From: Rhodosorus marinus CCMP1338
Taxonomy: Eukaryota > Plantae > Rhodophyta
Length of the DNA stretch: 64,000 nucleotides
Reading direction: 5' to 3'
Assembly (NCBI GenBank): GCA_029953675.1
Contig: JAMWBK010000011.1
Location: forward strand, 868,001-932,000
Shown here: one piece after another, positions 2,422-63,876 of the stretch
Layout of the letters: each line of letters begins with the position of its first letter
Position numbering within the stretch: the stretch's first letter is position 1
Notes under the pieces: generated by a model
Seen by the model: the letters and a program-made list of their open reading frames with translations, nothing else
Told to the model about the DNA's origin: nothing
Database searches by the model: none
Program-made: the position numbers and the translations under genes

Positions 2422-2659
2422 GGAAACTTTTCCCATAGCTCAGGCTGATACTGGTTTGGTGGTTTTTCTAACATAGCCTGATGCGCTAGAGTGGTCAGTG
2501 GAGAGGAATAACATTCATCTGGGCATATAGACTGCTTGGAACCTTTTCCCATAGCTCAGGCCGATACTGGTTTGGTTTGGTGGTTTTTCTAACATAGCCT
2601 GATCGGCTAGAGTGGTCAGTGGAGAGGAATAACATTCGTCTGAGCATATAGACTGCTTG
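2422..2659. repeat. Tandem duplication, ~116-bp unit x2
   Basis: 2422-2537 and 2538-2659 are near-identical (ggaa[a/c]cttttcccatagctcagg...gcatatagactgctt). Copy 2 has an extra tttgg. Confidence 0.95.
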
Positions 2660-9448: not shown

Positions 9449-10332
9449 CTGACAAGGCTCCATATTGGTCTGGCCAAGCGGACTTGGTTTTGAGGACCTA
9501 GTCCGCCGCGGACGGTATTCTGAGATGGTTGTTTATGACTGACCAGATATGGTACGATATGACTGGATGCAGTCAGTTACGGTACCAGAGCTTTGCTCTC
9601 GTCTTGATATACGGTTGGAACAATTCCCCCTCCGGGCCAGCTACATTGTCCTACCGTTAGTCTCGTTCCTAGGCGTTCATCGTTGTAGTTCGAAGAAACG
9701 CTGGAGCAAAACCACGAGCATCCGAGGAGCTGACGAGGCGGGTATTTCAGCCGGTCTGCCTTAACACACCCCTTGTTAAAATTTGAAGTACTCTGGAGTA
9801 GCCTCGAGCGTCCCGCGCTAATCTCCCCAACAGCCACCCGCGGCCTTGTCGACGCCCAGCTGGGCGGACAGATGTAAGTCCACTAGTGAGAGTCGTACCC
9901 AAAAAGCTAAAGATAAGCTTCCGACCGACATCCATAGCTCGATCTGATTCAGGCCACACCATCTCAAACTGGTGTATAAGACCCTATGGAGGGTCCAAAA
10001 ACAGGTTCTTCTAAACTAAGTTTGGTGTAAACTTATCAACCTGTCCGTTAAGATCCTTTGAGGGGCTGAACCAGCAAGCTCACGTCCTAGCTCGGTCCCC
10101 ATGCAGTCGGGCGTACTCTCTGGAAAGTGCGGACCGATGTACTAGAAATATCTGAGCTGAAGGTGGAGAGGGGAGATTGGGTGCTTGGTCGGAGAGAGCA
10201 CCTGGATTCGTGAAAGAGAAGGACAAATGGAGGAGAGAACTCGCTGGTTTGGAGAGAGGCTTTTGGCCGGTTAGTAGAGATCTGACAAGTTTTTTCGATT
10301 CGGATGTGAAAGGTGTTGGCATTCCTTCAACG

Positions 10333-33117: not shown

Positions 33118-34260
33118 ATGGCGTTTGTGGGTAGTATTGGGGTAGGTGGCGCCCGGGCTGGGCAGGGGCGGAGGTGTGTATCTATGAAGGTACAGACCAT
33201 GCCGACCGCTGTGCGGTTGCAGAGCTTGAGGTCGTCTGTAAATAGTCCTGTTGGAAAGGTCCGCAGCAGAGCTCCATGCAATGTAAATGACGCGCTGGAC
33301 TACTTGCTTAGTCGGGGTGTGAGGATTGACGCTGTGGAAGTGGGAAGGAGCGTAATGGACGTGTTGAGGGAGCTGCATGTAGAGGAAAGCACCGCCCTTG
33401 CTGGCTTGTTAAGGGGTATGCCCCTCACTGAAGTTGAAATTTCCAATATGTTTGGAGAGGAGACCCTTGAAGTTTGGAGAAGGGATAGAGAATTCTGCGG
33501 GATGATGCTTGCAAACCCTTTGGAAACGCCGAGACTTTCACTGGTGTCTATGATTGGCGACTTTCAATGCCTGGTCATTGAGCTCGCTCATGCAGTAGCT
33601 AGTCTACGACATCTTCCGATGAGTTCTTTGTCCAAGAAGACCAAGGAACATTTGCAGCAGATACTGAAAGTCCACGTCCCGTTGGCGGACACCCTGGGCC
33701 TGAAGGCGGTGCATGCGGAGCTCGAAGAACTGGCGTTTATGCACCTTTACCCGAAGGAGTACGACCAAATGTGCGTGCTTGTCGGGGAGCGGTTGGAAAA
33801 GTACGGAACTTTGTTGGGAGACACAATCAGGGAGATGGAGCTTGCGCTGGCAAATCTACCGCAGTTCCAGAAGGTATCATCATTCCGCGTGTACGGCCGT
33901 ATCAAAAACTGCTTCTCGATTTACCGAAAGATGATGAGCAAGGAACTCAAGTTTGAAGAGGTTATGGACTTCGTAGCGCTTCGAGTCATCCTGAACCCGA
34001 AGACCGGTGTTTCTGAACAAGAGGCGTGCGAACGGGTGATGCGAGAGGTGACGAAGCGCTGGAAGACCGTGGAAGGCACAACCAGGGACTACATCAGCCA
34101 TCCGAAGGATAACGGATACCAGTCCCTGCATACCACGATTCTGCCAGAGGGCCTCCCAATGGAGGTCCAGGTTCGCACGGAAAGAATGCACGAGTGCTCT
34201 GAAATCGGCAGTGCTGCCCACTACAACTACAAGTTCGAGGGCCTGCACCAGCTGATCTAG
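33118..34260 (+). CDS. RSH: Plastid-targeted RelA/SpoT homologue ((p)ppGpp synthetase) with degenerate HD hydrolase region
   Basis: MAFVGS transit peptide. Synthetase motifs GRIKNCFSIYRKM, DFVALRV, DYISHPKDNGYQSLHT, EVQVRT, AAHYNYK. AGLLRG replaces AxLLHD. Confidence 0.93.
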   Translation: MAFVGSIGVGGARAGQGRRCVSMKVQTMPTAVRLQSLRSSVNSPVGKVRSRAPCNVNDALDYLLSRGVRIDAVEVGRSVMDVLRELHVEESTALAGLLRGMPLTEVEISNMFGEETLEVWRRDREFCGMMLANPLETPRLSLVSMIGDFQCLVIELAHAVASLRHLPMSSLSKKTKEHLQQILKVHVPLADTLGLKAVHAELEELAFMHLYPKEYDQMCVLVGERLEKYGTLLGDTIREMELALANLPQFQKVSSFRVYGRIKNCFSIYRKMMSKELKFEEVMDFVALRVILNPKTGVSEQEACERVMREVTKRWKTVEGTTRDYISHPKDNGYQSLHTTILPEGLPMEVQVRTERMHECSEIGSAAHYNYKFEGLHQLI

Positions 34261-35069
34261 CTCGTCTGTATGTTGTTTACACAAAGTATATACTTGCACA
34301 CAACGCAGAAATGATTAGTTTATTTTGCTATATAGAATGATTGATACGCCGACCTATGCACAAGCTGCAATGTTTTTAGTGGTCCTGGCTTGCACATAGT
34401 TATTGAACAAAAGAAAGTGGAAAGATCCTTTAATGGAATAAAACAGTTTTTCAAGTACAGCCAAACTTGCTTCCAATCCCAAACCGTTACAAAATTCTGC
34501 CAACCTCAAGAACGGATAGTCTCAATTCCAAACTCTGCAGCTACACCCAAAGACCCGGAGTCGCACTGGAAACCCAGTACAGTAGCATTGCAAGGAACTC
34601 AAGCAATGCGGTCAGCTCATGTGGACAAGGACCGTCCTCCCTCAGAAATGCAGTGGTCGACATCACTAAACTAGCTCTAGCTTCCGACTAACTAACCACC
34701 CCTGGCCACTCAATGCATCAAGAACATAGTCCAATTCCTGCAACTCCCGTGACCTCAAAACCGCACATGCGAAAACACACAAGACCAGCTAGCGTTTTTC
34801 CAGACCATCGCCAGCGCTTTTCCAGGCCATCGCCAGCGCAGCTTTCCGAAATTTTTCAAACGCGTTTGCCGCGATGACAGTCCGCTACATCCAGACATAC
34901 GAAAACCTACTGATTCACCTTTTTGGACATTCCCACAGAACCTATCAACAACAAAACACTCACATGTCATTTCTGCACGAACGAGATTCTTCATCGGCCC
35001 CATTGCTTGCAGTGCAAGAGGTAAGGAGCATAACGATTTCCCAGATTTCGATCCAGTTTCCTATATAAC

Positions 35070-35321
35070 CTAGAATATGGTAAGCAAGTTCTCAATGAGC
35101 CTCGATTCTGTTCAGTATACCAGATTATGGTATCACAGCTGATATTGAACTAGAATATGGCAAAAGAAGTCCACTGAGGGCCATTTTTCAGCATACCAGA
35201 TTACGGTATTATTACTGATGAATAAACCAGAATATGATAAAAAAGTGCTCACATTAAGCTCCGATTCTGTTCAGGATACCAGATTACGGTATTGTTGCTG
35301 ATAATGAACTAGAATCTGATA
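35070..35321. repeat. Minisatellite, ~77-82-bp unit x3 plus a partial unit
   Basis: Units start c[t/c]agaat at 35070, 35150, 35227 and 35309. Shared core ttcag-n-ataccagatta[t/c]ggtat. Confidence 0.85.
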
Positions 35322-35440: not shown

Positions 35441-36407
35441 ATGGCAGGGTTCGTAGTGAGTGTCACATCGGGATTCAGACGAGAGGTGCCTGTGTGCCGT
35501 GAGGCGACGTCGGGTTCATCCGAGGGCCCGTCTGTTGCCTCATTGGAGGATTCGTCTGGGCTGTCGTCGCGATTGACTGGGGTGAGGGTGAAGTTTGGGG
35601 TTTGCGCTGGAGTTGCTTGCACGCAGGATGGTTCGAAGGCGCTCCTCGACATGTTTAAAGTACTTGAGGAAGATACGCCGGAAGAGTTGTCTGTTGAGGC
35701 CTGTGGCTGCCTCGGAATGGTGATTGAGATCGTAGATACAATTTTGCATGTTTTTACTTCTAGGCAGCGAGCAACTCAGGCAAATTTCGTGTTCATCCTT
35801 ATTGAATAGTGCGGTGAGGGCCCGAACGTCATAGACTTGAATTCCCGTACTTTTCACAAAAGGTTGCAAACTCCCGACGAAGCACTCGCCCTCCTCGGAG
35901 GGATCTCGATTTCGCCGGAGTTGTCCGAAGCTTTCCTCATCAAGCACAGAGGAAACCTTGAGATGTCAGAATCAAGGCCGCAGGATGCGATACAGTCATA
36001 CACTGAAGCTCTGCGATTGCTCGGTGACAGGCAAGGAGAAGTCTTCGATCAGGTACGAGCAGCCCCGAACTGGATAACCTTGTTCCCTTGAGCTACATCT
36101 CAGCAGGCTAGGTACACGCGCTGTTCACTAGGTCCGCCTTGCGATTCTGTCGAATCGTTCGGCTGCTCGGCTGGAGCAAGAAGACACTGATGGTGCTGAA
36201 ACCGACGCTGGTGATGCCATCGATATCTTCCCAGCCTACGCACCGGCCTGGAGGAGGCTGGGCGATGTCCACACCAAGAAAAAAGAGGTCGAGTCTGCCA
36301 TCAGGGCGTACGAGACGGCCTCAAAGCTGGATCCAAAAAGCTCCAAGGAGATGGAGAAACGAATTAGCAAAGCGAGGAGGCTGAACAAGCGCTTTGGTCT
36401 GTTCTGA
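35441..36407 (+). CDS. Putative plastid thioredoxin-like [2Fe-2S] ferredoxin + TPR protein; exons 35441-35719, 35810-36052, 36132-36407
   Basis: Splicing yields VCAGVAC...CGCLGMCGEGPNV (Trx-like ferredoxin Cys pattern), followed by TPR-like helices (AIQSYTEAL, AWRRLGDVH, AIRAYETASKLDP). Phase-0 introns of 90 and 79 bp. Confidence 0.85.
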
Positions 36408-36485
36408 GTCCTAGTCCTTCCAGTTGTACAACTTCAGTTCCGAGTCCTAGGACTAGTCCTTCCAGTTGTACAACTTCTGCAAATA

Positions 36486-38755
36486 CTATCTTCGATTTTT
36501 TTGTCTTCGGATGTCCCCCTCCTTCTTCGCATGTCTCTCCTCAGCCTCCTGCTCTTCCCTGAAGAACTCTTCCAGCTCCTCGAGCTCCCTGAGCGTGGGC
36601 TTGATCTCATCGTAGCGCTGACGGGCCCACTGAAACGCAACACGGCGGTTCTCCTTGCCTGTCGTTTCCGTAGCTTCGTAGACCTCCTGCATCCAATGGA
36701 GCTTTGTGCGCTCGAAGAATACCTGCAGAGAGAAGAAGAATGGGTTTGACAGCATCTGTAAGAACCGCTGCTGCCCCATGAATTCCCCGTCCATCGTACT
36801 GCTTCCACCCTCGTACCTTGAGCGTCTCACCAACTCTAGGCGTCCACGCATCGTCCTCAGTCACAAGCTTCTTCTCAAGCTTACTTCGCCTATTCTTTCT
36901 CTGCTCCTTCTTCTCCTCCGCTTCCTCATCGTCCTCGCTCTCATCTGCATCCTCGTCTCCCTCCTCAGCAAAGTCCGATGCGCCATCTCCACTTTCAGCC
37001 ATGTTGTCTGATCCTGATTCTTCCCCAGAGTCCGAAGCGTTCCACTCCATGTGTTTCTGGTTCAGCGCTTTTACGAGTTGATATTCGTCCAACTTTCCAA
37101 GGTCCACGGTCCTGGGCGATGATTTCGACGTCTGAGCAGTGACTGCTTTTTTCCCCCTCAACGGACTTGGCCAAAGTACAGAAAACCCTTACCATATATC
37201 ATCCAGCGTAACCTCTTGCTCAGCTTTCTCGTAGAGCCCGCCGTAGACCACCAGCTTGGAGTTTTTAACGAGAGCTATTGCGCTGCCGAAGCGCCCGACG
37301 GGTTTATTTTCATCCTCGAACGTCTCCTCGTCCTCGTCCTCGCCTTCATCGTCATCCTCGTCTGCATCTTCGGTCACGTCCTCCATAACCTCATCTTGCG
37401 GATCAGGTTCGGCCTCCGCGTCGGCATGTTTCGCCCGCCTTCGCCTTCGTTTCACCTGCTTCTTCTTCCTCAGGGTCATCGGATACCACCTGAACACGAA
37501 GAGAAAACCGCAGTTCCAAAATTTCAACGACCTCGTGAGCCCCATCCTTCGTCGTTGAGAGCAGCAAGGTTCTTACTTCTTCCGGGCAATATTGTAAGCA
37601 AACAGGTCGTTGTAAAACGTGCTCCGAAGACTCTCTTCTGTTTCTTCATCCTCGACACCTCCGAACGTAACCAGCTGGTTTTTGTACAGCACCATACCAA
37701 ACCCGCTCCTATTTGATGGCCCGTATCCACTTCGCTTTAGCTTTTCCCACCTGATTGATAGGGCAAGAGTCCTCGTCCTGAGTGCTTGAGCTGCTGCCTG
37801 CCGCTCGCCTGGCTTTAGCATGTACCAAGACCTACCTCTTTGACTCTGGATCGAACTTCCAGATCTCAGAATGCACGATACCGCGGCTAGTCGCTCCATC
37901 ATCAACCATCGGTTGATTTGCCCCAGCAACGCCTGCAAGGCGCTTCTTCTCCTTGTGTGACATGGGCTTGGCGCCTTTGAGCTTCTCCTTGCAGTATCCA
38001 CCATAGAGTATTATCGCTTCGCCCGTGGAAACCCAGCAGTAGCCGCTCCTTGGAGAAGGACAGTTGCCCGTCACCTCGATCTTGACCCATTTGAGCTCGT
38101 CAAGCTTGAGATCGATCATGTACAGATCGTTGAGATACTTCATGTCACTGATGGTGTCGAAAAACCCGCCGAATACATAAAGCTTGTCCTTGCATACACA
38201 CATGCGATGACCAGATCTTGGGCTAGGACCTCCGCGAACATCAAGCTTGGTCCACGTGAAGTCGGACGTGTCCAGTCGCCACAAATCCCGGTAGTGGTAG
38301 AACTGCGTCTGCCTCGGTGACGAAAACTCTCCTCCAAATATGTACATGAACGATTTATGTACAGTCGCCGCATGCGAGCTTCTGGGCGGAGGCTGGTTCC
38401 TGCTCCTGTACTTGGTCCATGCCTCTTTATCAAGCGAGAATCTGTAGAGGTCCGCGTAGAAAAACGTCGTGGTTCCGTCGAACTTTTCACCCCCAAAGAT
38501 GATCAGCTCCGAATCCTTGAGTGGATTCGACACCATCGTAAAGTTGACCCTAGGGGTAGGACCTTCAGTTTCGGAGACATCAACAGCCAGCTGCTCCATC
38601 TCCGCCGCGATGATCTCCTCAAGTAGTTCCTCGACATCCTTCTCCCCACTCTTCTCCTTGGCCTTTTTCGCTCGTTTCGCCTCCTTCTTGGCGGTCTTTT
38701 CAAGCGTCTTCGCCTTTCCAAGACCTTTCTTCTTATTCTTATCCTTCTTACCCAT
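36486..38755 (-). CDS. KLHDC4: Kelch-repeat protein KLHDC4/Kel3 with C-terminal DUF4110-like region; exons 38755-37836, 37750-37577, 37489-37193, 37111-36817, 36722-36486
   Basis: MGKKDKNKKK start. PTPRVNFT, LIIFGGE, PPPRSSH, YIFGGEFSSPRQTQFYHYRDLW, PSPRSGHRM. Four in-phase introns of 81-94 bp. Confidence 0.93.
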
Positions 38756-39615
38756 CGTTCTTATCCTTTTCAATCCATCCAAGCTCCACTCAATCCCACC
38801 GCCACCACACCCAATGACCCTCTCCATCCCCACGACGCTCATCAAGCATCACAAAATATCTCCAACCCTAATAATCCAATAGAAACACTTAAAATGAACC
38901 TAAACGACTCTGACAGTATTTTAAGATATATAATTGGATTCTTTTTATCCAATTAAAACACTTACGTAGCGTCTTAAGCTTTTTATCATTAATCATTATA
39001 ACCAAAGAACTTAATTGTTTTAAGAAATAAATTAATTTGGTCAGTCAGTTCATCAATCGCGATCCACGCGGTCTGTCTCTGCCTCAATAGCAACTGAACT
39101 GAACTGAGGTCTATCTTGAATGCGATCTGATCTCACTATACTGGGCTATGGGTGGTTCAAGCATCGTCGGATAGGTCAACAACGCTTTTTTATCATGGAT
39201 AGCCCACGCGCGACGCCTGGGACAGCTGCGGTCACAAAACCATGAGGAGTCTCTACGGGATACAAAGACAAAAAGGGATGTGTTTTGGAGTCCGACTTTT
39301 TATCCCTTGTACCCGAATACAGCGTATCATCTTACAAGAATTGCCAACCAGCGGGAGTATGAGGAGAAGGCACTGTTCTTCAAACAGCTGTTCGCCCACC
39401 AAACCTCCCAAACTCTTTCACGGGGCTAGTCTGCAAAACACATAATATCACCGGTGTTGTGTGGAAAAGTCCTCTTTGAAGTGATGAAGACACCAACGCA
39501 GACTACGTTATTTGGGGCCGGCGTTGTCGTTTCAAGTTCGATGAAACTGACCCTGCAGGTATTTTCAGGGAAACTCAATCCATTATCCGTGCGAGGGGGG
39601 AAGGTCCCTTCGGAA

Positions 39616-39657
39616 AAGACTGGAACGCTTGAAGTATCCCACCAGCGTTCCAGTCTT
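39616..39657. repeat. Perfect 14-bp inverted repeat, 14-nt loop
   Basis: aagactggaacgct (39616-39629) and agcgttccagtctt (39644-39657). Confidence 0.9.
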
Positions 39658-40282
39658 GTCCCCAAGAACGCATCCATTCCTCGCCCCAGCACCGAGAGGG
39701 CGCGGCACGCGCGCAAACCATCTAAGTGTCACTATCATTCCCTTCCTCATCTTCCGATAAACCTTCAAAATAAATCCACAAAACATATTTCTACAAATGA
39801 AGCTTACGGAGAAATGCTCCTTGGGACATTCACTTGGGACGTGAACCGGTCCGATGCCCAATAAAAAACCAAATCTAACTGTCACCTGTGTTCCGTTCTC
39901 ATGCTTCAAATAAACCAAGAATCGAAGTCTAAAACAAACTTTACAAAGATGAAGCTTAGATGAAGACATTCGTGTTTGGGACAGTTTTGTCTGACATGAA
40001 CGGAGGTGAGCCACCAGATTTTGTTTCAGTGGGGACGTTCGCTTAGGAGCGTTTTGGCAATGGAGGAGAGAGAAGCGTGGAGAAGGCCTAGTTGTGGATT
40101 GAGGGAGAGCAAGAGGCAGATGTGGGAAGGGGGTGGGTAGGGTTAAGGGGCGGGTCTTATTGTTATGCGTTTGATGAAATGAATGAGTGGAGAGCTTGGA
40201 GCTAGTTCTTGAGGGAATGAATTTGTAAAGGGAGGACGAGTGGGAGGGAGGGATTTGGGTGGTAATGGATTGTGAGCTGTAG

Positions 40283-41816
40283 ATGGGGTTGGGATTTCTG
40301 GTTTGGAGTGGTGGTGGGGGGGTTAGGGTTAGGAGCCGTCGTCGGTTGGTTGGGTGTTCCGTGGTAGCGCCTGCGGAGGAGCAGAGCGTGAGGTTGGCGC
40401 TGGGGAGGTTGAAGGTTGAGGTGCTTCCGGAGCCGCTAAAGTTTTCTTCGTCATGGAGGACGATGGTGGAGACGTTGGAGAGCATGGGATTGACTGGGGG
40501 GCGGCTGTCAAAGCTCCTGAGAAAACGGCCAGCGCTTTTGGAGCTGGACCCGATGGAGACGGTGATTCCTTTCGTTAGAACCGTCACGACGGTTTTGGAT
40601 TATGATACCAAAGGTGCTTCCATTCTGCTGTGCAAGAGACCGTCCCTAATGGACTACCCGGAGATAGCCGTCGCCGAAGTCCTTTCCCTTCTGCTGTCGC
40701 TCGGAATTGAAGAACGTCTCCTCAGGTTCCTCCTCCTAAGGTTTCCCGGCATCGCAGAAATCAACCCATCACAAGTGCGATCGTCGCTTAGGTGCCTCGT
40801 AAAGGACGCACACTTTGAGGTCAACGAGCTATGGCCTCTTATCAGAGAATCGCCGTGGGTAATGTGTTACGACGTCGAGACCGAAACTACTCCAGTCATC
40901 GAGTTCCTCGAGAAGATTGGCGTACAGAATGTGAAGCTTATCATTCAGACTGAGCCAAGGGTAAGGAAAGGAAGAACAAACTTTTCGAATCTTTACAAAG
41001 TCAAACTTCTCATCACGAGCCAAGCCACGGTTTTCGGGTTTTCGGATGCTGAAAGGAGCCTTTTGATTCCTTCTGTGATCGCTTTCGTAGGTGCTTGGAT
41101 GTTCTGTACCTGAACAGCTCGAACCAGTGTACAGATTGTTGTTATCAATTGGATTAAGTAGGAGAGCCATTCCTCTGGTTTTACAGCTCTTTCCTTCCGT
41201 TCTTATTGCGAGCATTGAGGAGAAGCTAGTGCCGAATCGCGACTACCTGATCTCCTTGGGGTTGACCCGGGGAGATGTGGCTCATATGGTTCGGGCATTT
41301 CCACAGATCTTGCTGATGGATACTGAGGAGGAGATGGCAGAGGTTGTAAGATTTTTGGTAGCAAAGGGAGTGGAAGATATCGCAGAGTTTGTCTTTAGGC
41401 TGCCGTCTGTTTTGTCGTACGATGTGAATTCGAATATTAAGCCCAAGCTGAGCTTGCTGGAACGGGTGGGATATGAGATGCGTCAGATTGTTGAGTTTCC
41501 GGGGTGTTTATCATTTTCTCTGGAGGACGTGATCATCCCCAGGATCGCATTTCTACGCTATCTCGGCGTGGACGTGAGTTCCATGCGACTGCCCATCGTC
41601 TTGGCTTGTAGCGAAGACCGTTTCTGCGAACGGGTGGCTTCAAGATCGACAAGCGAATTTCAAGATTTTTGTAGGGACTTGGCAGAGAAGAGAGGCGTGA
41701 ACCGTCATCCGGGAAAACGACGGAAGAGGAAGAGAAAAGGGAGGACAAGGAAGGACAACAGAGCGTTCCCAACGAGGTGCAGGTTCCCTATCAGAGAGTT
41801 GTGTTCTCAACGGTGA
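40283..41816 (+). CDS. mTERF-family organellar protein; exons 40283-40960, 41091-41816 (C-terminus uncertain)
   Basis: Repeated mTERF-like units (FPSVLIASIEEKLVPNRDYLISLG, LPSVLSYDVNSNIKPKLSLL, FPGCLSFSLEDVIIPRIAFL). GTAAGG donor at 40961, phase 0. Confidence 0.88.
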
Positions 41817-42154
41817 ACCGAGACAGCCTTGAAGCTTTGAGAGCAACGCACTTGCTGGACGCCCAAGAGGGATCCGTCTTCGGAGACGGAGCTGTTCCAT
41901 ACTACAGAGCTGGCTCTCAATTAGGATAGGAAAATGAACTAACTCTTTTCTTTTTTAACTATATTAAAAGCTGTGTGTAAATTGAGAATGATACGTTACA
42001 TAGCAGCGGGGGTGCTTTCACACTCATCGGTGATACGCACAGGCACTTCAAGAGAGGTCTACGGAAACCGAAGCGACCTTCAAGGTGATGAGCCTCGGCG
42101 TGACTGTTTTCGCCGGCTTGTTATTCATTTCGCGTACGCTATTCGGAGCGTTGC

Positions 42155-43162
42155 TCAGAGGCGTTGGGGAGACGCTGTGCTGCCGTCAAGTTGAAAGGTT
42201 CCATTGGGCCAGTACCTCAATTCGAGGGCATTCCAAGGAGATGGATCGGTGGCTGCTTTCGACACTCGCGTATTTCCTCGGTGGGTGAGATAATGTCCCT
42301 CGGGAACCACAGCCGAGGTCGCGAGGTCAACGACGGCTGCGGCGTTCTGTGGAGTGACGCATATGAGATCCTTTACCAATTCGACGGCGTCTCGCAGTGG
42401 CTTCGGTAGCGTGTTGCTCATGAGAGGAGACCAGATGAGTCCTGGATGGACATCCACGACATCGTATCCGTTCTCCCGAAGCGCCCGCGAGAAGTGGAGC
42501 AGGGCGAGCTTCGATGCTGCGTAGCTCCTTGAGCTATTTTGATTGTCTCCCACGAGCATGTCACCGGAAAGGGCGCGCAGGTGCGAGGACGAGCTGACGT
42601 TCACTATCCTACCTCTACGTCCCAGGCTCGGAAGAAGACCCCTGGTAAGCACGACGGTGCTAGAAAAGTTGATCCCAAAGATGCCGGGTGGAGACGCCGA
42701 AGCAGCGTTGTTCACTAGCAGCTTGATTTCGAACTTTTTCATAGACCGTAGAAAGCTCTCGATGCAGTCTCTGGATCTCAGTTCCAGCTCGTAGCACTGA
42801 TGATCGACTGACGTTCCACCCAGCTTCTTCAAAGCCCTCGAGCAGCGTTCGAGCTTGGTAGTAGTGAGGACCACACGATACCCCTTCGCCGCAAGCTGGC
42901 GACAGACCTAAGTCAACAAGACCGGAGCCCAGCAGCTTAGAGAAGACCAACAACGAAAACATCTTCAGAGAAGGCACTCCTCACGCACTGCCTCACCGAG
43001 AGTACCTGTTCCGCCGGTCACGATGGCGACAGGCCTGCCCTCAACCTGCCGCAGGATTGCGGAAGAACTGACCCGACTGCCTCCGAATAGATTCGATAAA
43101 ACCTCGCCCCCAACGTGTCGCGCCCATTGTCCATAAGCCCAAAGCCTGTCCAAGAAACTCAT
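42155..43162 (-). CDS. Short-chain dehydrogenase/reductase (retinol-dehydrogenase-like); exons 43162-42989, 42907-42155
   Basis: IVTGGTGTLG, LVNNAA, IVNVSS, YAASK, VHPG. One 81-bp phase-0 intron. Confidence 0.9.
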
Positions 43163-44465
43163 TCTGTTTACGCACGTCTTTCACAAGAGAGGCTGAAAAG
43201 TCAGACTTTCTAAATACTCTACCTGCCGACGTCCTTGACAAGCTCACGGCATCGCTACCGCCCCTACCGGATGAGCCAAGAGAGAAAGTTTCCCGACCTC
43301 CTCAAAGCAACTCGATAGGCGCGCTCTTCCTCTTTTCACTCGCCAACGGCTCCGTCGAGCCTGTTCACGAGCTCCACGATCGTAACCACTCGTCCACCCG
43401 CGCCCGCATGACGTACAGGTCTCACAGTCACCTCGGTAACGCTCGATAGAATGAAAGCACTGCTCCGGCGCACCCAACCCCTTCCAATCGAAACCAGAAC
43501 AGCTTTGGCGACCACTAGGAGAAGGCCATAGGACAGAGACGCGAATCGCACGACCTTCACCGCTGAGCAGGATGGCACTACTGCTGCGGCGATCTTGATC
43601 GTCAACAGAAACTGCAACTCAATCTCACAAGTGGGCCCTGTTTGGGAACGTTTTTCTCCTTGTTGCCTGCGGATATACTCTCCGCAGCCACGCAGGACCG
43701 CGTCAAAAACTCCATACAGAAACCACTCCAAGCGCGGAGCGCACCAATGACTAGTTCATTCAACCTGTGGGCAGAGGCACACCTGAGATTGGTCATGGCT
43801 GATGAGGATGCATCAAGCAGAAGGCGTGGGTCTGAATAGTCGGGCACATCTCCGGGTGTCACTCGAACCGCGCCAAGAAGCTCTTCCACATCTGATCCCT
43901 ACCTCCCATACTACGTGAGCACGGGATATACGCGTCTAAATAGGCTTGAGGTTTAGGATGGTACTATTGCTGCGTCGATCTTGACCGTCAACAGAAACAG
44001 AATCTCAAGTGTACAAGTGTCCCTCTCTGGAAATTCATCTCTCCTGCTTGGTGTCCAGGACTAGACTTCCCGGCAGGGCTCTCCAGGACGACGGCCGTCA
44101 CGGTTGCTGGGCAGGAAGGCACCACATCACAGAAATGTGGGACGGAGTCCTCTTGCGACGGTGGATTTGAGGCCTTCTTCGTCGGGTTGGGAGGTGGGAC
44201 AGTTGATGTACATGGGAATTGGGTCTTTTTGGTTCGTTTCGGTTTATGTAGCGGCGGCGGTTTGAGTTCTTCTTCATCGGGTTGGGAGTCCGGAGGGTGA
44301 CGTACGGGGGAATTGTGTTTTGCTCGTTCGGGGTGGTGTGTAGGAAGGCGTTTGGGTTGCTTCGTGAAGCATTCGGGGCTGTTTGTCGTGCGGAGGGGTT
44401 TGTAGAGGGTTGTGTTTGGTTTAGGAGCGTTTGTGAGTTGGGAGTAGGAGTTTGGGGTGGGGAAG

Positions 44466-46470
44466 ATGGGGGGTAGAAGGAGTAGGGGGAAGAGGAGGGC
44501 TCCTGTTGAGCCATCTGTGGAAGTTGGGGATGAGGTTGATGAGTTTGTGAGTCGAAGGGAGGAGGTACGCTTGGGTGGTAGGGGATTGGATGAGGAGGAG
44601 TCTGAGGAGGAGGTTGATGAGACTCCGGTGATGGGGTTGGAAGGAGAGGATGGGAGTCAAGAGGATGACGACGATGATGATGATGAGGAGGAGGCGTGGA
44701 AGAAGAAGAAGCTGTATTACGGAGGAGACAATGTAGACTACAATTTGATGAGCAGCGATGAGGAGGATGCACTTGAGGAGGAGGAACACGAGGCACTGCG
44801 TTTGCAGAACAAAGAAGCCGAAGAGCTGGAGGAAGAGGATTTCGCAGGCCAGGATGTGGGCGAGGACTCGGAGGAGAGCGCTGAGAAGTCGGACGAACGA
44901 CAGGACGAAAAAGACAACATCCACGAGCAGGCTACTGTCATGGAATCGGTCCGAAAGGCTCTCGGCACCGTCTCCGACGATGAAGATAAGGACGCATCAA
45001 ACTCCGACGAGCAATCGCTGGAAGTATTCACGAGAGAAGGCCTCCAGAAGTCTGCGAAGTCCACCCTGTCCCAAGCTGAAAAGCTCCGAATCGTGGAGGA
45101 AAAATCTCCCGAACTCATCGGCCTCCTCGCGGAGCTCAAGCAGTCCGCCCAGGTGCTTCGCAGTCTCTCAGACAAGACAGACAAGCTGTCCCAACCGGAG
45201 ACCTTGTTTCAGCACGCCCTCATCAACTACTGTGTGAACATCCTGTTTTACCTGAGACTCAAATCGGAAGGTGGCGACGTGCGCTCGCACCCGGTGATCG
45301 GACAGCTGTTAGAGATGAACAGACAGATCTCAAGGTTGAAGAAGATCGCGGCAATAAGTCCAGAGCTTTTGGAAGCGGTGTCATCCGATGAGGAGCGTCC
45401 ATCCGGTGCAGAAGACGACGGAGAAAATGTACGTTCTGACTTTCCCTTTTTGTTTATATCGACCGTGAGTCGGATGTATCGGAGCGACAGAGATGAGAAT
45501 CTCAGTTCCATATTCCTACTAAAGAACTCAAAATCAACTGCGATCACAAGGCCTGGGCAAGCTCCTTGCGCTCGCTTTTTGTTGCGAGTTTGTTCTCACC
45601 AACGCAATAGCAAAAAGCGAACGTATAAAAGTGTTGCAGGCTTCATAGGTCGCCGGTTCGATTCTTGTGAATGGAGTACTAGTGTGAAGGAGAGACTCTT
45701 CTGACCAAAAGGCTTCTGCGTTTGTTTGTTAGGATATGGATGAGAGTGGACGTGAACTGGTTGATGCCGTAGAACAGCAGAGCGAAGATGAGGATATGGG
45801 CAGTACTGATGAGGATGAAGTGGGCGATACTACTACGGATCTAAAGGCGGATGGGGATCTGGACGAGTTCTCTGAGTTGATCGAAATGGTCGGTGACGCC
45901 GGCGGGAGGAGGCGGTCGGCTCGGTTTGGGGATGTGGAGGCTCAAGCTGGGGGTTCGCGTCGCGTGCTGAAGCGGATTAGGATGCATGGTGCTCTGAATA
46001 AGACGTCGCATCCTTCGGCTGAAGATGAGGTTTTGGGTGAACCTGCGGAGAGGCCTCGTGTGGATGCGGGTAGGGCTGGATTGGATAAGGTCGTCGAGGG
46101 CTCGGAGGCAGACGAGGAGGAGGAGGATGATGGCGTGGTAGAAGGGGCGAAATCGAAAAAGCAGAGGAAGCTGGAGCGAGAGAAGAAGTTCCAGGAGAGG
46201 AGAAATTCTGCCCATGTCTATACGTACAAGGATGATGCTGATGAGGAAGACCGTCGCAAGGCAAGTAGGGAGGTGATCAAGAACCGCGGACTCACACCAT
46301 ATCGGAGCAAGAAGAGAAGGAACCCTCGTATCAAGAACAAGCTCAAGTACGAGGATAAAATGAAGCGACATAAGGGCGTTGCGAGGACTGCAAGAACTGA
46401 GCTCGGCGGTAGCTATGCTGGTGAATTGACAGGCATCAACATGAGGTCGACAAAGAGTGTGAAATATTAA
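44466..46470 (+). CDS. SAS10: SSU processome factor Sas10/Utp3; exons 44466-45428, 45733-46470
   Basis: Acidic N-terminus, NYCVNILFYLRLK...SHPVIGQL, and C-terminal KNRGLTPYRSKKRRNPRIKNKLKY...YAGELTGI. The 304-bp intron is long for this window and could hide a small exon. Confidence 0.92.
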
Positions 46471-49750: not shown

Positions 49751-51316
49751 TCAAGGGAACTGCTTTTGCACGTAAGAGACCCTGAGTTCAACAAAACGAT
49801 CGCAAAGTGCAGAAGTGCATGACCGGATAAGCCGAGGAGCAGTCCCTGGTCGAACCGGAAGCCCCAGGTCAAACGTGTTAGGGGCAATAAGAGTATCGTG
49901 CCCACTGGTAGTATCCTCATCCATGACGGTGACCTCGATCTTGCCGCTGTATGTCCTCGTTCCAAGTGACCTTTCATAGTTCCATACCGGGTTGTGGTTG
50001 CCCCCGATCGTCGGGGTCTTCAGATAACCAATGGAATATCCGTTGGCATTGAAGGCTCTCACTTCAACGTACGGGTCCGATTTACCCGCAAAGAGACCAT
50101 CCCTGTCCGGAAGGTTGTGTCCCTTCACCACTTCAACAGTTATCTCACCATATGGATACTCACAGTTCCGACCGAACCAGCCTCGAGCGCACTCGCACCA
50201 AAAGTCCGAGATGTTGTCAATGCATTTTCCTCCGTTTTGGCACGGATTTGGATCGCACTCGTTGCGGTCGGGAATGAACTCGCTCTTAAACCTCAGCTTG
50301 TAGTCACAGTTACCAGGAGAAGCACAGAGCACGTTGTTCATCGTTCCAGGACGCACGGTCACCAACTGATCATAGATGATGACGTCGTCCCCACTCAGAT
50401 CGTCGCTATCAAACACAGATATTCTGTAGAACATGTAGGAGCCTGGGATAAACTGGTATCTCTTGTTCCAAACGGGCGTGTTATCGTTGCTGATAACGTT
50501 CGTCTGTCTCACGGTCCTGCTTCCGTCCGCGTGGACCGCTTCAATTCTGACGTAGGAGTCCGGTTTCTTTGAGCTGAAACAGCAGGAGTCCTTATTGGGG
50601 AAGTCTTTGCCCTCAATGATGGTTAGAGCCAGCGATCCTTTCAGTCCCTCGGCTGGGCAGTAGTACATTCTGTTGATAGTGTTAATGTCAGCAGCACTGA
50701 GGTCCGTTGCGGTGCCAAGTGGGCGGGAGGCATTGATTGTCTTTTTTCCGTTGCGGCTGAGGAAGAAGCTTCCGTGGTGCATGATAGAATTGTAGTCGTA
50801 GCTGATCCCGTAGGTATCGACCTTTTTCCATGGCTGTGACTTAAACTGCTTCTTGTACTCGTCGCCGACGTTGTTCAGGAAAAGTGAGATGTATGAGGTC
50901 CTCTGCGGATGCACATGCTGGTCGAACAGTCCGATAGCATGTCCAAGTTTGTGCATGACGCGAGCCTTGTCGTCAGAAACGTCGCCAGCGCAATTTCGCC
51001 TAATGTTCACTCTTTGCACTCCACCCATGAATCCAACTTCTTCTTTGTAACATTTAACAGTCTTGGACAGGAATACGATGCGGTTGTTTGCTTGACTGCT
51101 CTGAATGAACAGCAGGCACGTCTCCTCGGCAAATCGCTCAATAGCGCTGCGGATGTCCCGTTTGTCCTGCGACGTCAACGTGGAATGGAAATCGTAAAAG
51201 ACGGCCTTATCGGGCCACTTTTTCGCGTTCGATCTCACTCCTAGTGCTGCGTAGCTGGTATTGATGAGCATGGCCAACAAGGCACACGCCAACACGATCT
51301 TCATTCGCCCGAACAT
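49751..51316 (-). CDS. Secreted astacin-like (M12A) - C2 - EGF - C2 protein, predicted catalytically inactive (copy 1)
   Basis: Signal peptide (M)[18 protein letters not shown], start at 51316 or 51304. [12 protein letters not shown] replaces HExxHxxGxxHE; SIMHH. Two C2 domains (PDSYV/NTPVWN, SDPYV/HNPVWN) flank [14 protein letters not shown]...[12 protein letters not shown]. Confidence 0.9.
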
Positions 51317-59880: not shown

Positions 59881-60426
59881 ATGAGTATATTTGTATTGAA
59901 CGTGAGGTTGCCGAAATCAGCTATGGATTGTTTGGATTTGAGCTCTGGAGTGGAGACTTGGGCGGACTGGGAGGTTTCCTCTGCGACTGTACCGTCTTCG
60001 GATGTTGCTGATGAGTTTGAGAATGCTGCGCTGGCAGAAGAAATCATGAACGAGGTGCTTTCTGGCAGTCTTCCGACAGTGCTTGGCCTCGAGGATTCAC
60101 GTGAATTTGCAGATGAGTTCTGTACGTCCGACTTTGAAAGTTCTTCGGAATCGTCTTCGTGTACGATTTCCGTTTGTGAGGAACAAGATGTCTCCCACCA
60201 CTGCCGTGCACCTGTGTCCAAGCCCTCAAAGAAGCGGGTGTACAAGAAAGAGGCATGCCCGGTGTGCAACGAGGTATTCTTCCGGCGACACGAGATGATG
60301 AGACACCTCAAGGCATCGCACCTGAAGATAAAACCATTTCAGTGCTCCTTCTGCCCGAAGAAGTTCGCGAGAAATTCCCATGTCAAATCGCACGAGAGCA
60401 GGATTCACCTCAAACCCGCAGTCTGA
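59881..60426 (+). CDS. Small C2H2 zinc-finger transcription factor (2 fingers, acidic N-terminus); start may be at 59923
   Basis: CPVCNEVFFRRHEMMRHLKASH, linker LKIKPFQ, CSFCPKKFARNSHVKSHESRIH. Confidence 0.88.
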   Translation: MSIFVLNVRLPKSAMDCLDLSSGVETWADWEVSSATVPSSDVADEFENAALAEEIMNEVLSGSLPTVLGLEDSREFADEFCTSDFESSSESSSCTISVCEEQDVSHHCRAPVSKPSKKRVYKKEACPVCNEVFFRRHEMMRHLKASHLKIKPFQCSFCPKKFARNSHVKSHESRIHLKPAV

Positions 60427-62292: not shown

Positions 62293-63876
62293 CTAATTCT
62301 GGTAGTGGTAGTTGACCTCAACGTCCACCCAACGAGAGCACCTGGATGGACTGTCACAGACCTTGACAATGTAGGGCTGGGTTCCCTGAAGGACTGGATT
62401 GTTCAACTGGAATGTTCTCATCGGAAGGAGGGTATCATCCCCGCTAGTTGTGTCGTGGTCCTTGGTTGAAACGGCGAAGGATTTGAACGACCTGTAGCCG
62501 AGCGAGCTGGCGTAGTTCCAGACGGGATTATGGTTTCCTCTGATAGTAGGTGTCTTCATGGTGACTGTCCTTCCGTCCACGTCAGTTGCCACAATAGTTA
62601 CGTATGGATCAGAGTCACCTGCACCAAAACCGTCCTTGTCCGGAAGGTTGTGTCCTCCGAGTACCTTGAGGATGAGCTTTCCGAACGGGCGCTCGCAGTT
62701 TACGCCAGTGAACCCACGCGGGCAGTTGCATACGTAGTCTGCTTCGAGATCTACGCATTCTCCTCCATTCTCGCAAGGGTTTCTTGCGCATTCATCACGG
62801 TCCGCGGTCAACTCTGTCCTAAACCTTAGCACGCCCTTGTCCGTCGCTCCTGACGAGTGGTACATGACGTTTTGGGATGATCCAATTCTAACAGGGAATA
62901 TTTGGCTGTAGAAGATCAAGTCGTCATCAGACCCGCTGTCGTCATCGAGGACGTGGACCCTATAGTACATCCATTCGTCAACGTTGAAATCGATCTTCTG
63001 GTTCCATTCGGGATTGTTGTTGTCACGGATCACTCTCGTCTGCTGGGTAACCTTGTGTCCGGCGGCGTTGTAAGCTTCCACTTTGACGTACGTATCTGGT
63101 CTCGACCTACCGAAGTAGATGCTAGGGTCCTTATCCGGCAATCCCTCCGCGCGCTGAATGGTGATCGAGAACCTCCCGTTAGTACCCGTTCCCGGACAGG
63201 TGTACATTCTGTTGAGCGTCAGGATGTCGCTTGAGGTCAGGTCGGTTGAGCCTCCCAACGGGTATGCGGGGTTGTACTTGTAGGTCAGAGTCCTGCGGCC
63301 GTTTCCACTCAAGAAATTGTTTCCATAGTGCATGATCGATCTGGTGTCATATCGTACACCGTAATGATCAACATCGCTCCACGACTCCTTGTCGAACTGT
63401 TTTTCGTATAGGTCGTCGTCTGTTCTCACGTTATTGAGGTGCACGTTGAGGTAGGAATCACGGTCTGGGCGGTTGTGTTCGTGGAAGAGGCCAAGAGCGT
63501 GTCCGATCTCATGTACAATCTCCGTGTAGGTGTTTTCAAAGCCATCGTCGCATCCCGATCCAAAGTTGACCGTCTGAACACCTCCCTTAAAACCAATAGT
63601 CTCCGAGAAGCATCTCGGTTCGCTAGCCTGGAATCGGATCCTGTTCCGCGCACGTGTGGACTCGATGAAATTTAGACACGTCGTTTCCTGGTACCGCTTG
63701 CTGCTTCTCTTGATATCGGTTTCCTGCCTGTACGACAGACTCGAGTCGAGCTCGTAGAACACCGTACGATGGGGCCACTTCCTGCTGTCTGATCGAACTG
63801 CTGCCGATCCACTACTAAACTCGATCACCGAGGCGATCGCAGCCATCGTCAATAGTATCTTCACCATTCCAGCCAT
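62293..63876 (-). CDS. Secreted astacin-like (M12A) metalloprotease - C2 - EGF - C2, catalytic motif intact (copy 2)
   Basis: Signal peptide. [19 protein letters not shown] and Met-turn SIMHY. C2 domains with Asp-rich loops ([17 protein letters not shown]; [17 protein letters not shown]). [37 protein letters not shown]. Confidence 0.94.

What the first reader, a model, noticed from the sequence alone, without database searches (positions are those of the whole stretch)
62293..63876. Secreted astacin-C2-EGF-C2 architecture: a candidate Ca2+-dependent membrane-docking extracellular protease in an alga
Seen: signal peptide, astacin domain with intact HExxHxxGxxHE and SxMHY, C2 domain, calcium-binding-type EGF, second C2 domain, and no transmembrane segment; the paralogue at 49751-51316 has the same layout. 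Established: C2 domains are mostly cytosolic, and the best-known secreted example is perforin, where an EGF-adjacent C2 docks on membranes in Ca2+; astacins usually carry CUB, MAM, ShK, TSP or EGF domains. I do not recognise this combination. Inference: in seawater Ca2+ the two C2 domains could anchor the protease to own or foreign membranes, for defence, matrix remodelling or daughter-cell release.
Basis: partly seen in the sequence, partly recalled or inferred. Interest (0 to 1): 0.82.

Follow-up and report, generated by a model that had tools for sequence, protein, structure and literature searches.

The report
Secreted red-algal astacin protease with C2 domains
A red alga (Rhodosorus) encodes a secreted zinc protease of the animal-type astacin family that carries two calcium-binding C2 domains and lacks the usual safety-catch propeptide; the domain layout is real but already sits uncharacterised in databases, mostly in sponge-like genomes.

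Summary
Window 62293-63876 (-) is one intron-less, transcribed 527-aa gene: signal peptide, intact astacin domain ([17 protein letters not shown]), C2, calcium-binding EGF, C2, and no membrane anchor. The organism is Rhodosorus marinus or a close relative (93% identical MMETSP protein).

The novelty claim does not hold. 76 of the best 120 database relatives carry astacin plus C2, including RefSeq proteins of the sponge Halichondria panicea with the same layout. At least four R. marinus family members are already in UniProt as "Metalloendopeptidase". No paper found describes the combination, and the main astacin survey does not list C2.

1. The algal proteins have no propeptide. Signal-peptidase cleavage would give the mature astacin N-terminus directly.
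2. The paralogue at 49751-51316 has a dead zinc site ([17 protein letters not shown]) yet is under purifying selection (dN/dS 0.13). Two more R. marinus paralogues also have degenerate zinc sites.
3. The perforin-like third calcium loop of C2-1 has Ser where perforin has membrane-inserting aromatics.

Calcium-dependent surface docking remains plausible but untested. Verdict: a new variant of a known kind, of moderate interest.

The parts
62293..63876 (-). Complete single-exon CDS (g1) of 527 aa plus stop: signal peptide, astacin, C2, cbEGF, C2
   Evidence: ORF. Domains. Collinear with transcript contig L009 at 88% nt identity. dN/dS 0.094 against the MMETSP-lineage orthologue.
63805..63876 (-). 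Signal peptide, residues 1-24 ([24 protein letters not shown]). The predicted cleavage site is placed 9 residues before the conserved Trp34.
   Evidence: The only Kyte-Doolittle peak in the protein. Modelled as a low-confidence helix at 3-14. Residues 25-35 ([11 protein letters not shown]) align to the mature N-terminus of BMP1 (AATSRPERVWP). No FEGD propeptide, unlike the relatives.
63193..63804 (-). Astacin (M12A) catalytic domain, residues 25-228, with the four conserved Cys (67, 89, 109, 227)
   Evidence: Pfam PF01400, E 4.5e-44. BMP1 E 8e-25 by sequence. TM 0.90 and rmsd 2.1-2.4 A to 3edh/3edg. Cys positions.
63478..63513 (-). Zinc-binding consensus [12 protein letters not shown], residues 122-133: three His ligands, catalytic Glu123 and family-specific Glu133. 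It is followed by NRPDRD.
   Evidence: Translation check. Alignment.
63325..63339 (-). Met-turn SIMHY, residues 180-184, with the zinc-ligand Tyr184
62803..63192 (-). C2 domain 1, residues 229-358. Ca2+ ligands D250, D261, D311, D313, D319. Loop 1 is [14 protein letters not shown] and loop 3 is DDDSGSDDD.
   Evidence: Pfam C2. Best PDB sequence hit is the perforin-1 C2 domain, E 1.1e-4. Loop positions. pLDDT is above 90 outside the loops.
62689..62802 (-). Calcium-binding EGF domain, residues 359-396 ([25 protein letters not shown]...)
   Evidence: Pfam EGF, E 4.4e-9. Matches to Notch, Delta and factor VII/IX cbEGFs. PROSITE PS01187 pattern match.
62296..62688 (-). C2 domain 2, residues 397-527. 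Ca2+ ligands D415, D423, D473, D475, D481. There is a C-terminal Cys pair, C507/C513.
   Evidence: Pfam C2. Best PDB sequence hit is synaptotagmin-7 C2B. D415, D423, D473 and D475 are invariant in the 8 algal-type proteins.
49751..51316 (-). Paralogue g2 (521 aa): same layout, 45% identity, a conserved pseudoprotease. It lies about 11 kb from g1, with a cyclin gene and a zinc-finger gene between them.
   Evidence: dN/dS 0.126 overall and 0.133 for the dead catalytic domain. A transcribed orthologue exists: P0232, P0287, L008. Intervening genes.
50918..50953 (-). Degenerate zinc motif of g2, [12 protein letters not shown]: catalytic Glu to Lys, third His to Asp, family Glu to Gln. Its Met-turn is SIMHH (50774-50788).
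   Evidence: The orthologue in the other Rhodosorus lineage reads HKIGRGIGLFDQ.

Best explanation
g1 encodes an extracellular astacin-family zinc endopeptidase of the red alga Rhodosorus.

Shown or read directly from sequence:
- The protein enters the secretory pathway through an N-terminal signal peptide.
- There is no propeptide, so signal-peptidase cleavage at about Ser24/Ala25 would itself produce the canonical mature astacin N-terminus. This is inferred from sequence alignment.
- In known astacins that N-terminus is freed only on zymogen activation, and it then salt-bridges to the family-specific Glu, here Glu133.

Inferred: the enzyme is therefore made active, without a zymogen stage.

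The C-terminal C2-cbEGF-C2 module keeps all Ca2+ ligands. At seawater Ca2+ it should be permanently loaded.

Inferred mechanism: the module docks the protease on an anionic surface just outside the cell. The most likely surface is a membrane, reached through the hydrophobic and basic first loops (IYF/R..R in C2-1, F in C2-2). There the enzyme would cleave cell-surface or matrix proteins.

The gene belongs to a pre-existing but uncharacterised astacin-C2-(EGF-C2)n family that is abundant in sponge-type genomes. Rhodosorus has at least five members. Three of them, including g2 in this window, have lost zinc or catalytic residues while keeping the signal peptide and C2/EGF modules under purifying selection.

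Speculation: these dead copies act as non-catalytic binders or competitors, and may replace the missing propeptide as a means of control.
For: Domain identity and intact catalytic motifs. Fold.

Secretion features: one N-terminal hydrophobic segment, no other transmembrane segment, and 12 Cys in domain-typical positions.

No propeptide: the alignment shows SP+FEGD+KR/RR|A in the relatives, but the signal peptide joined directly to the mature N-terminus in g1, g2, P0001, P0002 and P0031, and in P0255 and P0250. The spacing to Trp34 is identical to mature BMP1.

Role of the family Glu salt bridge, and the prodomain described as universal: PMC9848320.

Ca2+ ligands.

The family consensus has Trp at the loop-1 tips in sponge-type members (DTDPWL, DGWW/DGWF), like membrane-inserting C2 domains.

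Expression: MMETSP transcripts.

Purifying selection: omega is 0.094 for g1 and 0.126 for g2.

Dead paralogues.

Family membership: collinear 43-sequence alignment with conserved junctions, and Pfam architectures of relatives.
Against: No experiment supports secretion, activity, Ca2+ binding or lipid binding.

The third Ca2+ loops ([18 protein letters not shown]) lack hydrophobic residues. The two positions that hold perforin's membrane-inserting aromatics are Ser (plus my memory of the perforin literature). Membrane penetration would therefore rest on loop 1 alone.

Anionic phospholipids are normally scarce on outer leaflets. Stylonematophyceae are wrapped in thick mucilage (PMC10250338), so a polysaccharide target is equally conceivable.

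The signal-peptidase site is inferred, not predicted by a trained tool. The model's confidence for residues 21-30 is low, about 59.

The competitor role proposed for the dead paralogues is speculation.
Confidence: 0.45

Rival explanations
1. The Ca2+-loaded C2 domains bind the alga's own anionic (sulfated or carboxylated) mucilage polysaccharides rather than lipid. This would hold the protease, and the dead paralogues, in the extracellular matrix as matrix-remodelling and structural components.
For: The acidic Ca2+ loops have no hydrophobic residues in loop 3. Stylonematophyceae have thick mucilaginous walls (PMC10250338). In the other Rhodosorus lineage a carbohydrate-type sulfotransferase lies about 2 kb from the g1 orthologue, which is weak, circumstantial evidence. 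Conserved pseudoproteases fit a binding or structural role.
Against: I know of no documented C2 domain (PF00168) that binds polysaccharide. The nearest structural neighbours are all lipid-binding tandem C2 proteins. Loop 1 carries the Ile-Tyr-Phe plus Arg residues typical of membrane-inserting C2 domains.
Confidence: 0.25
2. The C2-cbEGF-C2 module is a protein-protein exosite. It would recruit substrates or partners, as the CUB and EGF domains do in BMP1/tolloid, with Ca2+ serving only to rigidify the module. There would be no surface docking.
For: Non-catalytic domains of astacins usually act in substrate recognition (established knowledge; PMC9848320). cbEGF domains rigidify tandem arrays. 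Some C2 domains are protein-interaction modules.
Against: Full conservation of all ten Ca2+-ligand Asp, together with exposed hydrophobic and basic loop-1 tips across the family, is the signature of Ca2+-bridged surface binding rather than of a purely structural site.
Confidence: 0.15
3. The protein is not released outside the cell. It would work in the lumen of an endomembrane compartment (vacuole, lysosome-like or secretory granule), docking on the lumenal leaflet. This is comparable to a digestive role that the sponge relatives might have in phagosomes.
For: A signal peptide only shows entry into the ER. An always-active protease could be tolerated in a degradative compartment. The sponge-type expansion is compatible with intracellular digestion (speculation).
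Against: No retention or sorting motif is evident: the C-terminus is ...NYHYQN and there is no transmembrane segment. Rhodosorus is a phototroph. cbEGF domains are typical of extracellular proteins.
Confidence: 0.1
4. The gene is a contaminant or an assembly artefact, for example animal DNA in an algal assembly. One 'plant astacin' was debunked in this way.
For: Astacins are regarded as holozoan, and plant hits have turned out to be contamination (PMC9848320).
Against: - Eukaryotic, alga-compatible neighbours including an RSH gene.
- GC3 of 0.63-0.64, identical to neighbouring genes.
- Orthologues at 88-90% nt identity in independent Rhodosorus transcriptomes.
- Further paralogues on a 3.19-Mb contig of the CCMP1338 genome.
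- The closest animal-type relative is only 37-38% identical.
Confidence: 0.01

Closest known systems
Uncharacterised astacin-C2-(EGF-C2)n proteins of sponges and sponge-like metagenome contigs, for example Halichondria panicea LOC135335979 (P0040) and 'zinc metalloproteinase nas-14-like' (P0037)
   Same: Collinear over 85-94% of the length at 30-38% identity. Same order astacin, C2, cbEGF, C2. Conserved junctions (YxCPGxGxxG; DxNEC). The same ten Ca2+-ligand Asp. Arranged in tandem gene arrays.
   Different: They carry a signal peptide plus an FEGD aspartate-switch propeptide with a KR/RR activation site. The algal proteins have none. Their loop-1 tips carry Trp, where the alga has Ile/Tyr/Phe. 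Many have extra EGF-C2 repeats. Apart from H. panicea, the source organism is inferred and not shown.
BMP1/tolloid and meprins (multidomain animal astacins)
   Same: Catalytic domain: E 8e-25, TM 0.90, same zinc motif, Met-turn and disulfide Cys. Secreted, and cbEGF is used as an accessory domain.
   Different: Their accessory domains are CUB or MAM/TRAF, never C2. All are zymogens with prodomains (PMC9848320).
Perforin-1 (MACPF-EGF-C2)
   Same: An extracellular C2 that follows an EGF. The perforin C2 is the best solved-structure sequence match of C2-1, and the two share the unusual loop-3 motif D-x-D-x-G-x-D-D-D-L. Ca2+-dependent docking is the working model for both.
   Different: There is no MACPF domain, and the effector here is a protease. 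The match is weak (E 1e-4 over 43 residues). Perforin's loop-3 aromatic positions are Ser here. By fold, tandem cytosolic C2 proteins score higher.
Tandem-C2 Ca2+/lipid sensors (E-Syt2 C2A-C2B, synaptotagmins, ferlins, copine BON1)
   Same: Best structural neighbours of the C2 pair (E about 1e-12). Canonical five-Asp Ca2+ sites.
   Different: All of those are cytosolic. Here the two C2 domains are separated by a cbEGF and lie behind a signal peptide.
Fish hatching enzymes (HCE-1, ZHE1) and algal cell-release proteases (Chlamydomonas sporangin and gametolysin; from general knowledge)
   Same: HCE-1 and ZHE1 are close structural matches of the catalytic domain (TM 0.82-0.86). Functionally, they are secreted proteases that open an extracellular coat.
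   Different: The hatching enzymes have no C2 or EGF and are zymogens. The green-algal release proteases belong to unrelated families (subtilase, M11).
Myroilysin (bacterial astacin xenologue)
   Same: An astacin outside Holozoa whose latency mechanism departs from the animal aspartate switch (PMC9848320). Sequence hit E 6e-9.
   Different: Myroilysin still has a prodomain (cysteine switch). The algal proteins appear to have none.

Membership tests
Astacin metallopeptidases (MEROPS M12A, Pfam PF01400) | Extended zinc motif HExxHxxGxxH with a catalytic Glu | tested here: met
   g1 reads [11 protein letters not shown] at 122-132. Not met in paralogue g2, which reads [11 protein letters not shown].
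Astacin metallopeptidases (MEROPS M12A, Pfam PF01400) | Family-specific Glu after the third His, and the ExxRxDRD motif | tested here: met
   g1 reads H132-E133-HNRPDRD.
Astacin metallopeptidases (MEROPS M12A, Pfam PF01400) | Met-turn SxMHY with a Tyr zinc ligand | tested here: met
   SIMHY at 180-184. g2 has SIMHH.
Astacin metallopeptidases (MEROPS M12A, Pfam PF01400) | Astacin catalytic-domain fold and conserved disulfide cysteines | tested here: met
   TM 0.90 and rmsd 2.1-2.4 A to BMP1. Cys67, 89, 109 and 227 are present. Disulfide pairing was not verified.
Astacin metallopeptidases (MEROPS M12A, Pfam PF01400) | N-terminal prodomain conferring latency (aspartate switch, FxGD). PMC9848320 describes it as present in astacins of all phyla. 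| tested here: not met
   No residues lie between the signal peptide and the mature N-terminus in g1, g2, P0001, P0002, P0255, P0250 or P0031. The relatives show FEGD. This is a departure in regulation and does not affect catalytic-domain membership.
Astacin metallopeptidases (MEROPS M12A, Pfam PF01400) | Zinc-dependent endopeptidase activity | not testable with these tools
   Needs recombinant or native protein.
Ca2+-dependent lipid-binding C2 domains (Pfam PF00168) | C2 beta-sandwich fold and a profile match | tested here: met
   Pfam E 2.9e-25 with two stretches. Foldseek E about 1e-12 to E-Syt2, myoferlin and Syt. Single-domain hits have TM 0.68-0.74.
Ca2+-dependent lipid-binding C2 domains (Pfam PF00168) | Five acidic Ca2+ ligands in loops 1 and 3 | tested here: met
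   D250, D261, D311, D313, D319 in C2-1 and D415, D423, D473, D475, D481 in C2-2, aligned to rabphilin, Syt7 and perforin ligands.
Ca2+-dependent lipid-binding C2 domains (Pfam PF00168) | Hydrophobic or basic residues at the loop tips for membrane insertion | tested here: inconclusive
   Loop 1 has I253-Y254-F255 plus R257 and R259 in C2-1, and F417 in C2-2. Loop 3 has none.
Ca2+-dependent lipid-binding C2 domains (Pfam PF00168) | Ca2+-dependent phospholipid binding | not testable with these tools
   Needs liposome assays.
Calcium-binding EGF (PROSITE PS01187) | The consensus [DEQN]-x-[DEQN](2)-C ... C-x-[DN]-x(4)-[FY]-x-C with six Cys | tested here: met
   [25 protein letters not shown] at 359-383. 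Matches to Notch and factor VII/IX cbEGFs.
Perforin-type MACPF-EGF-C2 proteins | A MACPF pore-forming domain upstream of EGF-C2 | tested here: not met
   No MACPF hit in Pfam. The N-terminal domain is astacin.
Perforin-type MACPF-EGF-C2 proteins | A C2 specifically related to the perforin C2, with its loop aromatics | tested here: inconclusive
   Perforin C2 is the top PDB sequence hit of C2-1, but only at E 1.1e-4 over 43 residues. The aromatic positions of loop 3 are Ser.
Database family 'astacin-C2-(EGF-C2)n' (uncharacterised; sponge RefSeq and metagenome proteins) | Collinear full-length homology with conserved domain junctions | tested here: met
   E 1e-121 to 1e-65 with 85-94% coverage. 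The 43-sequence alignment has a conserved CPGxG junction and DxNEC. Pfam architectures. Tree support for a single clade is weak: 9% bootstrap.

The most novel reading that the evidence does not exclude
The Rhodosorus proteins would be the first astacins that dispense with zymogen latency altogether, being activated by signal peptidase. Control would come instead from co-secreted, conserved pseudoprotease paralogues that compete for the same Ca2+-dependent C2 docking sites. The astacin-C2-EGF-C2 gene would have moved horizontally between an early-branching animal (sponge) lineage and a red alga. Its EGF-C2 unit would represent an ancient extracellular, seawater-Ca2+-driven membrane-docking module of the kind later used by perforin.
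Probability: 0.15. Interest if true: 0.7.

Novelty: new variant of a known kind. Interest (0 to 1): 0.45.

Why it matters
Astacins are textbook animal extracellular proteases. The most complete survey states that they always carry a prodomain, lists no C2 domain among their partners, and finds none in plants.

This locus, together with its database relatives, shows three things:
- a large, unstudied astacin subfamily that uses C2 domains outside the cell;
- a red-algal branch that has dropped the prodomain;
- repeated, selectively maintained loss of catalysis within that branch.

If the C2 domains do dock on membranes or on the matrix in seawater Ca2+, this would widen the small set of known extracellular C2 functions, which is essentially perforin. 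It would also give a tractable unicellular system for studying protease targeting and pseudoenzyme regulation.

If they do not, the locus is simply another horizontally scattered astacin.

Tried and rejected
1. Catalytic-domain phylogeny. The first NJ tree placed the algal clade outside the sponge-type clade. An HMM-aligned tree made them sisters. Bootstrap support for either arrangement is poor: 9% for the union, 13% for the sponge-type clade alone and 43-49% for the algal-type clade. Origin and direction of transfer are therefore left open.

2. Exhaustive search with the C2-EGF-C2 module. The ranking was swamped by multi-EGF Notch- and fibrillin-like proteins. It was useful only after picking out the hits that cover the whole module.

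3. Profile search with the eight algal-type proteins. The candidate cap was again filled by EGF proteins, and no new named taxa appeared.

4. Taxon of the unnamed relatives. Cluster look-ups gave no names. The talin neighbour of P0019 (GCA_029782515.1) returned only unnamed hits. Literature searches for GCA_029782515 and SRR22824282 found nothing. The SRR22824282/90 runs are not from the Stylonematophyceae paper.

5. Intron hypothesis for the 121-nt segment missing from the g2-orthologue transcript. Rejected: the segment is bounded by a CTCCTAC direct repeat and not by GT-AG, and its removal shifts the frame.

6. Pseudogene hypothesis for g2. Rejected by dN/dS 0.126.

7. Compositional signal of recent transfer. 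None: GC3 equals that of the neighbours.

8. Further copies in the window. None by tblastn.

9. Literature search for an astacin + C2 fusion or for extracellular C2 domains. Nothing relevant was found.
Full report
**1. What is at the coordinates**

Window 62293-63876 on the minus strand is one uninterrupted ORF of 527 codons.
- Pfam finds an astacin catalytic domain at residues 33-228 (E 4.5e-44), two C2 stretches (E 2.9e-25) and an EGF domain at 363-392 (E 4.4e-9).
- The zinc motif [12 protein letters not shown], the following NRPDRD and the Met-turn SIMHY are all intact.
- The EGF matches the PROSITE calcium-binding EGF pattern.
- Each C2 keeps the five canonical acidic Ca2+ ligands: D250/D261/D311/D313/D319 and D415/D423/D473/D475/D481.
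- The only hydrophobic segment is the N-terminal 20 residues. The 12 cysteines sit at domain-typical positions.

AlphaFold2 models are confident: pLDDT 86 for the full length and 90 for C2-EGF-C2. The catalytic domain superposes on BMP1 with TM 0.90. The C2 pair superposes on E-Syt2, myoferlin, otoferlin and synaptotagmins.

**2. Organism and gene model**

The best database hit is a Rhodosorus marinus MMETSP protein of identical length at 93% identity. A second R. marinus protein is 77% identical.

The window's other genes are eukaryotic: four C2H2 zinc-finger genes, a Kelch protein, Sas10/Utp3, an NIF phosphatase, a cyclin and an RSH (RelA/SpoT) gene. RSH genes are typical of plastid-bearing eukaryotes.

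A Rhodosorus transcript contig (L009) is collinear with window 63998-62012 at 88% nucleotide identity. The gene is therefore transcribed and has no intron. The published R. marinus genome averages about three introns per gene (PMC10250338).

GC3 of the two astacin genes (0.63-0.64) matches their neighbours (0.60-0.65). This gives no compositional sign of recent transfer and argues against contamination. The exact protein sequences are not in the protein collection. Synonymous divergence from the MMETSP lineage is about 0.36. The window therefore comes from a distinct lineage of the R. marinus complex.

**3. Is the architecture new?**

No, not to the databases.
- Among the best 120 relatives, 76 cluster representatives carry both the astacin and C2 Pfam domains, most of them with EGF as well.
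- Two are RefSeq proteins of the sponge Halichondria panicea. One of them (P0040, 537 aa) has exactly astacin-C2-EGF-C2.
- The rest come from long eukaryote-like metagenome contigs and unnamed NCBI assemblies, often in tandem arrays.
- A 43-sequence alignment is collinear end to end. The astacin-to-C2 junction (YxCPGxGxxG), the start of the cbEGF (DxNEC) and the Ca2+ ligands are all conserved. This argues for one origin of the fusion.
- R. marinus itself has further members. NDN08_002057 and NDN08_002058 are adjacent genes on a 3.19-Mb contig of the CCMP1338 genome, already in UniProt as "Metalloendopeptidase". Their layout is astacin-C2-EGF-C2-(EGF-like)-C2.

The literature is a different matter.
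- Full-text searches found no paper on an astacin-C2 fusion.
- The comprehensive survey by Gomis-Ruth and Stocker (PMC9848320) lists ABC, CLEC, CUB, EGF, FA58C, FN3, HYR, IG, kringle, LCCL, LysM, MAM, MATH and other accessory domains. It does not mention C2 or red algae.
- That survey reports fewer than 400 astacins outside Holozoa, which it attributes to horizontal transfer.

**4.

(a) There is no propeptide.
- Almost all relatives have a signal peptide, then a propeptide with the FEGD aspartate-switch motif, then a KR/RR|A activation site.
- In g1, g2, P0001, P0002, P0255, P0250 and P0031 the signal peptide abuts the mature N-terminus directly.
- Residues 25-35 ([11 protein letters not shown]) align position for position with mature BMP1 (AATSRPERVWP).
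- In astacins the new N-terminus salt-bridges to the family-specific Glu after activation, and the survey describes a prodomain as part of the minimal architecture in all phyla.
- The algal enzymes would thus be activated by signal peptidase, with no zymogen stage. This is an inference.

(b) The paralogue at 49751-51316 is catalytically dead.
- It reads [12 protein letters not shown] and SIMHH: the catalytic Glu, the third His, the family Glu and the Tyr ligand are all replaced.
- It is not a pseudogene. It keeps an open frame, a signal peptide, all domain cysteines and all ten C2 Asp.
- Its orthologue is transcribed in the MMETSP lineage.
- dN/dS against that orthologue is 0.126 overall and 0.133 for the dead catalytic domain alone. 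For g1 the value is 0.094.
- The orthologue has lost a further zinc His (HKIGRGIGLFDQ).
- NDN08_002057 (YQLGKVLGMVET, SIMIF) and NDN08_002058 (HELGHVLGMYNS, SIMTM) also have degenerate zinc sites.
- So three of the five Rhodosorus family members found here are conserved pseudoproteases.

(c) The perforin analogy is partly borne out, with a caveat.
- By sequence, the best solved-structure match of C2-1 is the perforin-1 C2 domain (E 1.1e-4). The match includes the loop-3 motif D-x-D-x-G-x-D-D-D-L.
- From my memory of the perforin literature, the two x positions hold membrane-inserting aromatics in perforin. Here they are Ser.
- Hydrophobic and basic residues are present only in loop 1: IYF and R..R in C2-1, and F in C2-2.
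- Sponge-type relatives carry Trp at these tips.

**5. Relationships**

The algal-type proteins are the Rhodosorus family plus P0186 and P0031. The last two come from the same unidentified organism, sampled in SRA runs SRR22824282 and SRR22824290. The group shares several features:
- no propeptide, seen wherever the N-terminus is present (P0186 is N-terminally truncated);
- a C-terminal C...CSR motif;
- in g2 and P0186, a vicinal Cys-Cys in loop 1 of C2-1.

NJ trees of the catalytic domain give 75-83% support for Rhodosorus monophyly. The deeper nodes are unresolved: 43-49% for the algal-type clade and 9% for its union with the sponge-type clade. A single origin of the fusion therefore rests on collinearity, and the direction of any horizontal transfer cannot be decided here.

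**6. Mechanism**

Shown or read directly from sequence: a secretory signal, an intact astacin active site, Ca2+-competent C2 and cbEGF domains, expression and purifying selection.

Inferred: the enzyme is active as soon as it folds. In seawater Ca2+ the C2-cbEGF-C2 module is loaded and tethers the protease to an anionic surface. I favour membranes (0.45 for the overall statement), because the nearest folds are all lipid binders and loop 1 has the right chemistry.

Rival readings:
- Ca2+-bridged binding to the sulfated mucilage (0.25);
- a protein-recruiting exosite (0.15);
- a lumenal rather than extracellular site of action (0.10).

The dead paralogues may be competitors or structural binders. 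That is speculation.

**7. Verdict**

This is a real, well-formed gene. It is a new variant of a known kind: an astacin with C2 accessory domains and no prodomain. The architecture is already present but unstudied in databases. Interest is moderate.

Noticed in passing
L008 (JGI 3300017118 transcript contig) versus window 50436-50556: The transcript of the g2 orthologue lacks 121 nt from the middle of C2-1. The missing segment is bounded by a 7-bp direct repeat (CTCCTAC) and not by GT-AG, and its removal shifts the reading frame. It may be a reverse-transcriptase template-switch artefact, an aberrant isoform or a strain-specific deletion. Two transcript isoforms exist (28736 and 28737).
   Followed up: partly
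window 21-1196, 4331-5686, 10177-11640 (+) and 59881-60426 (+): Four genes encode C-terminal C2H2 zinc-finger proteins. Three of them form a loose same-strand array in the first 12 kb. This may be a local transcription-factor gene family expansion.
   Followed up: no
window 33061-34260 (+): A RelA/SpoT homologue (RSH) with HD_4 and RelA_SpoT domains. This is a (p)ppGpp enzyme typical of plastid-bearing eukaryotes and supports an algal nuclear origin for the window.
   Followed up: no
L009 4055-4954 (-), about 2 kb downstream of the g1 orthologue: In the other Rhodosorus lineage a Sulfotransfer_2 (carbohydrate-type sulfotransferase) gene lies next to the astacin gene. The window shows no nucleotide match beyond 61588. 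Either synteny differs there, or the contig is chimeric.
   Followed up: partly
L001 (ERZ25072258) and L002 (ERZ25073846): The sponge-type relatives sit in tandem arrays of two or three astacin-C2-EGF genes within 14 kb. Related secreted proteins with only EGF and C2 domains and no protease also exist (P0082, P0089).
   Followed up: partly
window 2422-2659 and 35067-35321: Two tandem repeats. One has a 121-bp unit in 2 copies (90% match). The other has a 76-bp unit in 3.2 copies (74% match). Both lie in apparently non-coding sequence.
   Followed up: no
window 36001-46000: GC skew swings strongly between adjacent 2-kb bins (-0.18, -0.15, +0.25, -0.06, +0.29). Overlapping long ORFs occur on both strands around 39.6-41.8 kb and 44.1-45.7 kb. 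The cause was not examined.
   Followed up: no
window 49751-51316: g2 residues 245-246; also P0186: A vicinal Cys-Cys sits in the first Ca2+-binding loop of C2-1 ([13 protein letters not shown]). It is shared with P0186 from an unidentified organism (NKDGGCCFRSPKPD). This is an unusual feature for a C2 loop and its significance is unknown.
   Followed up: no
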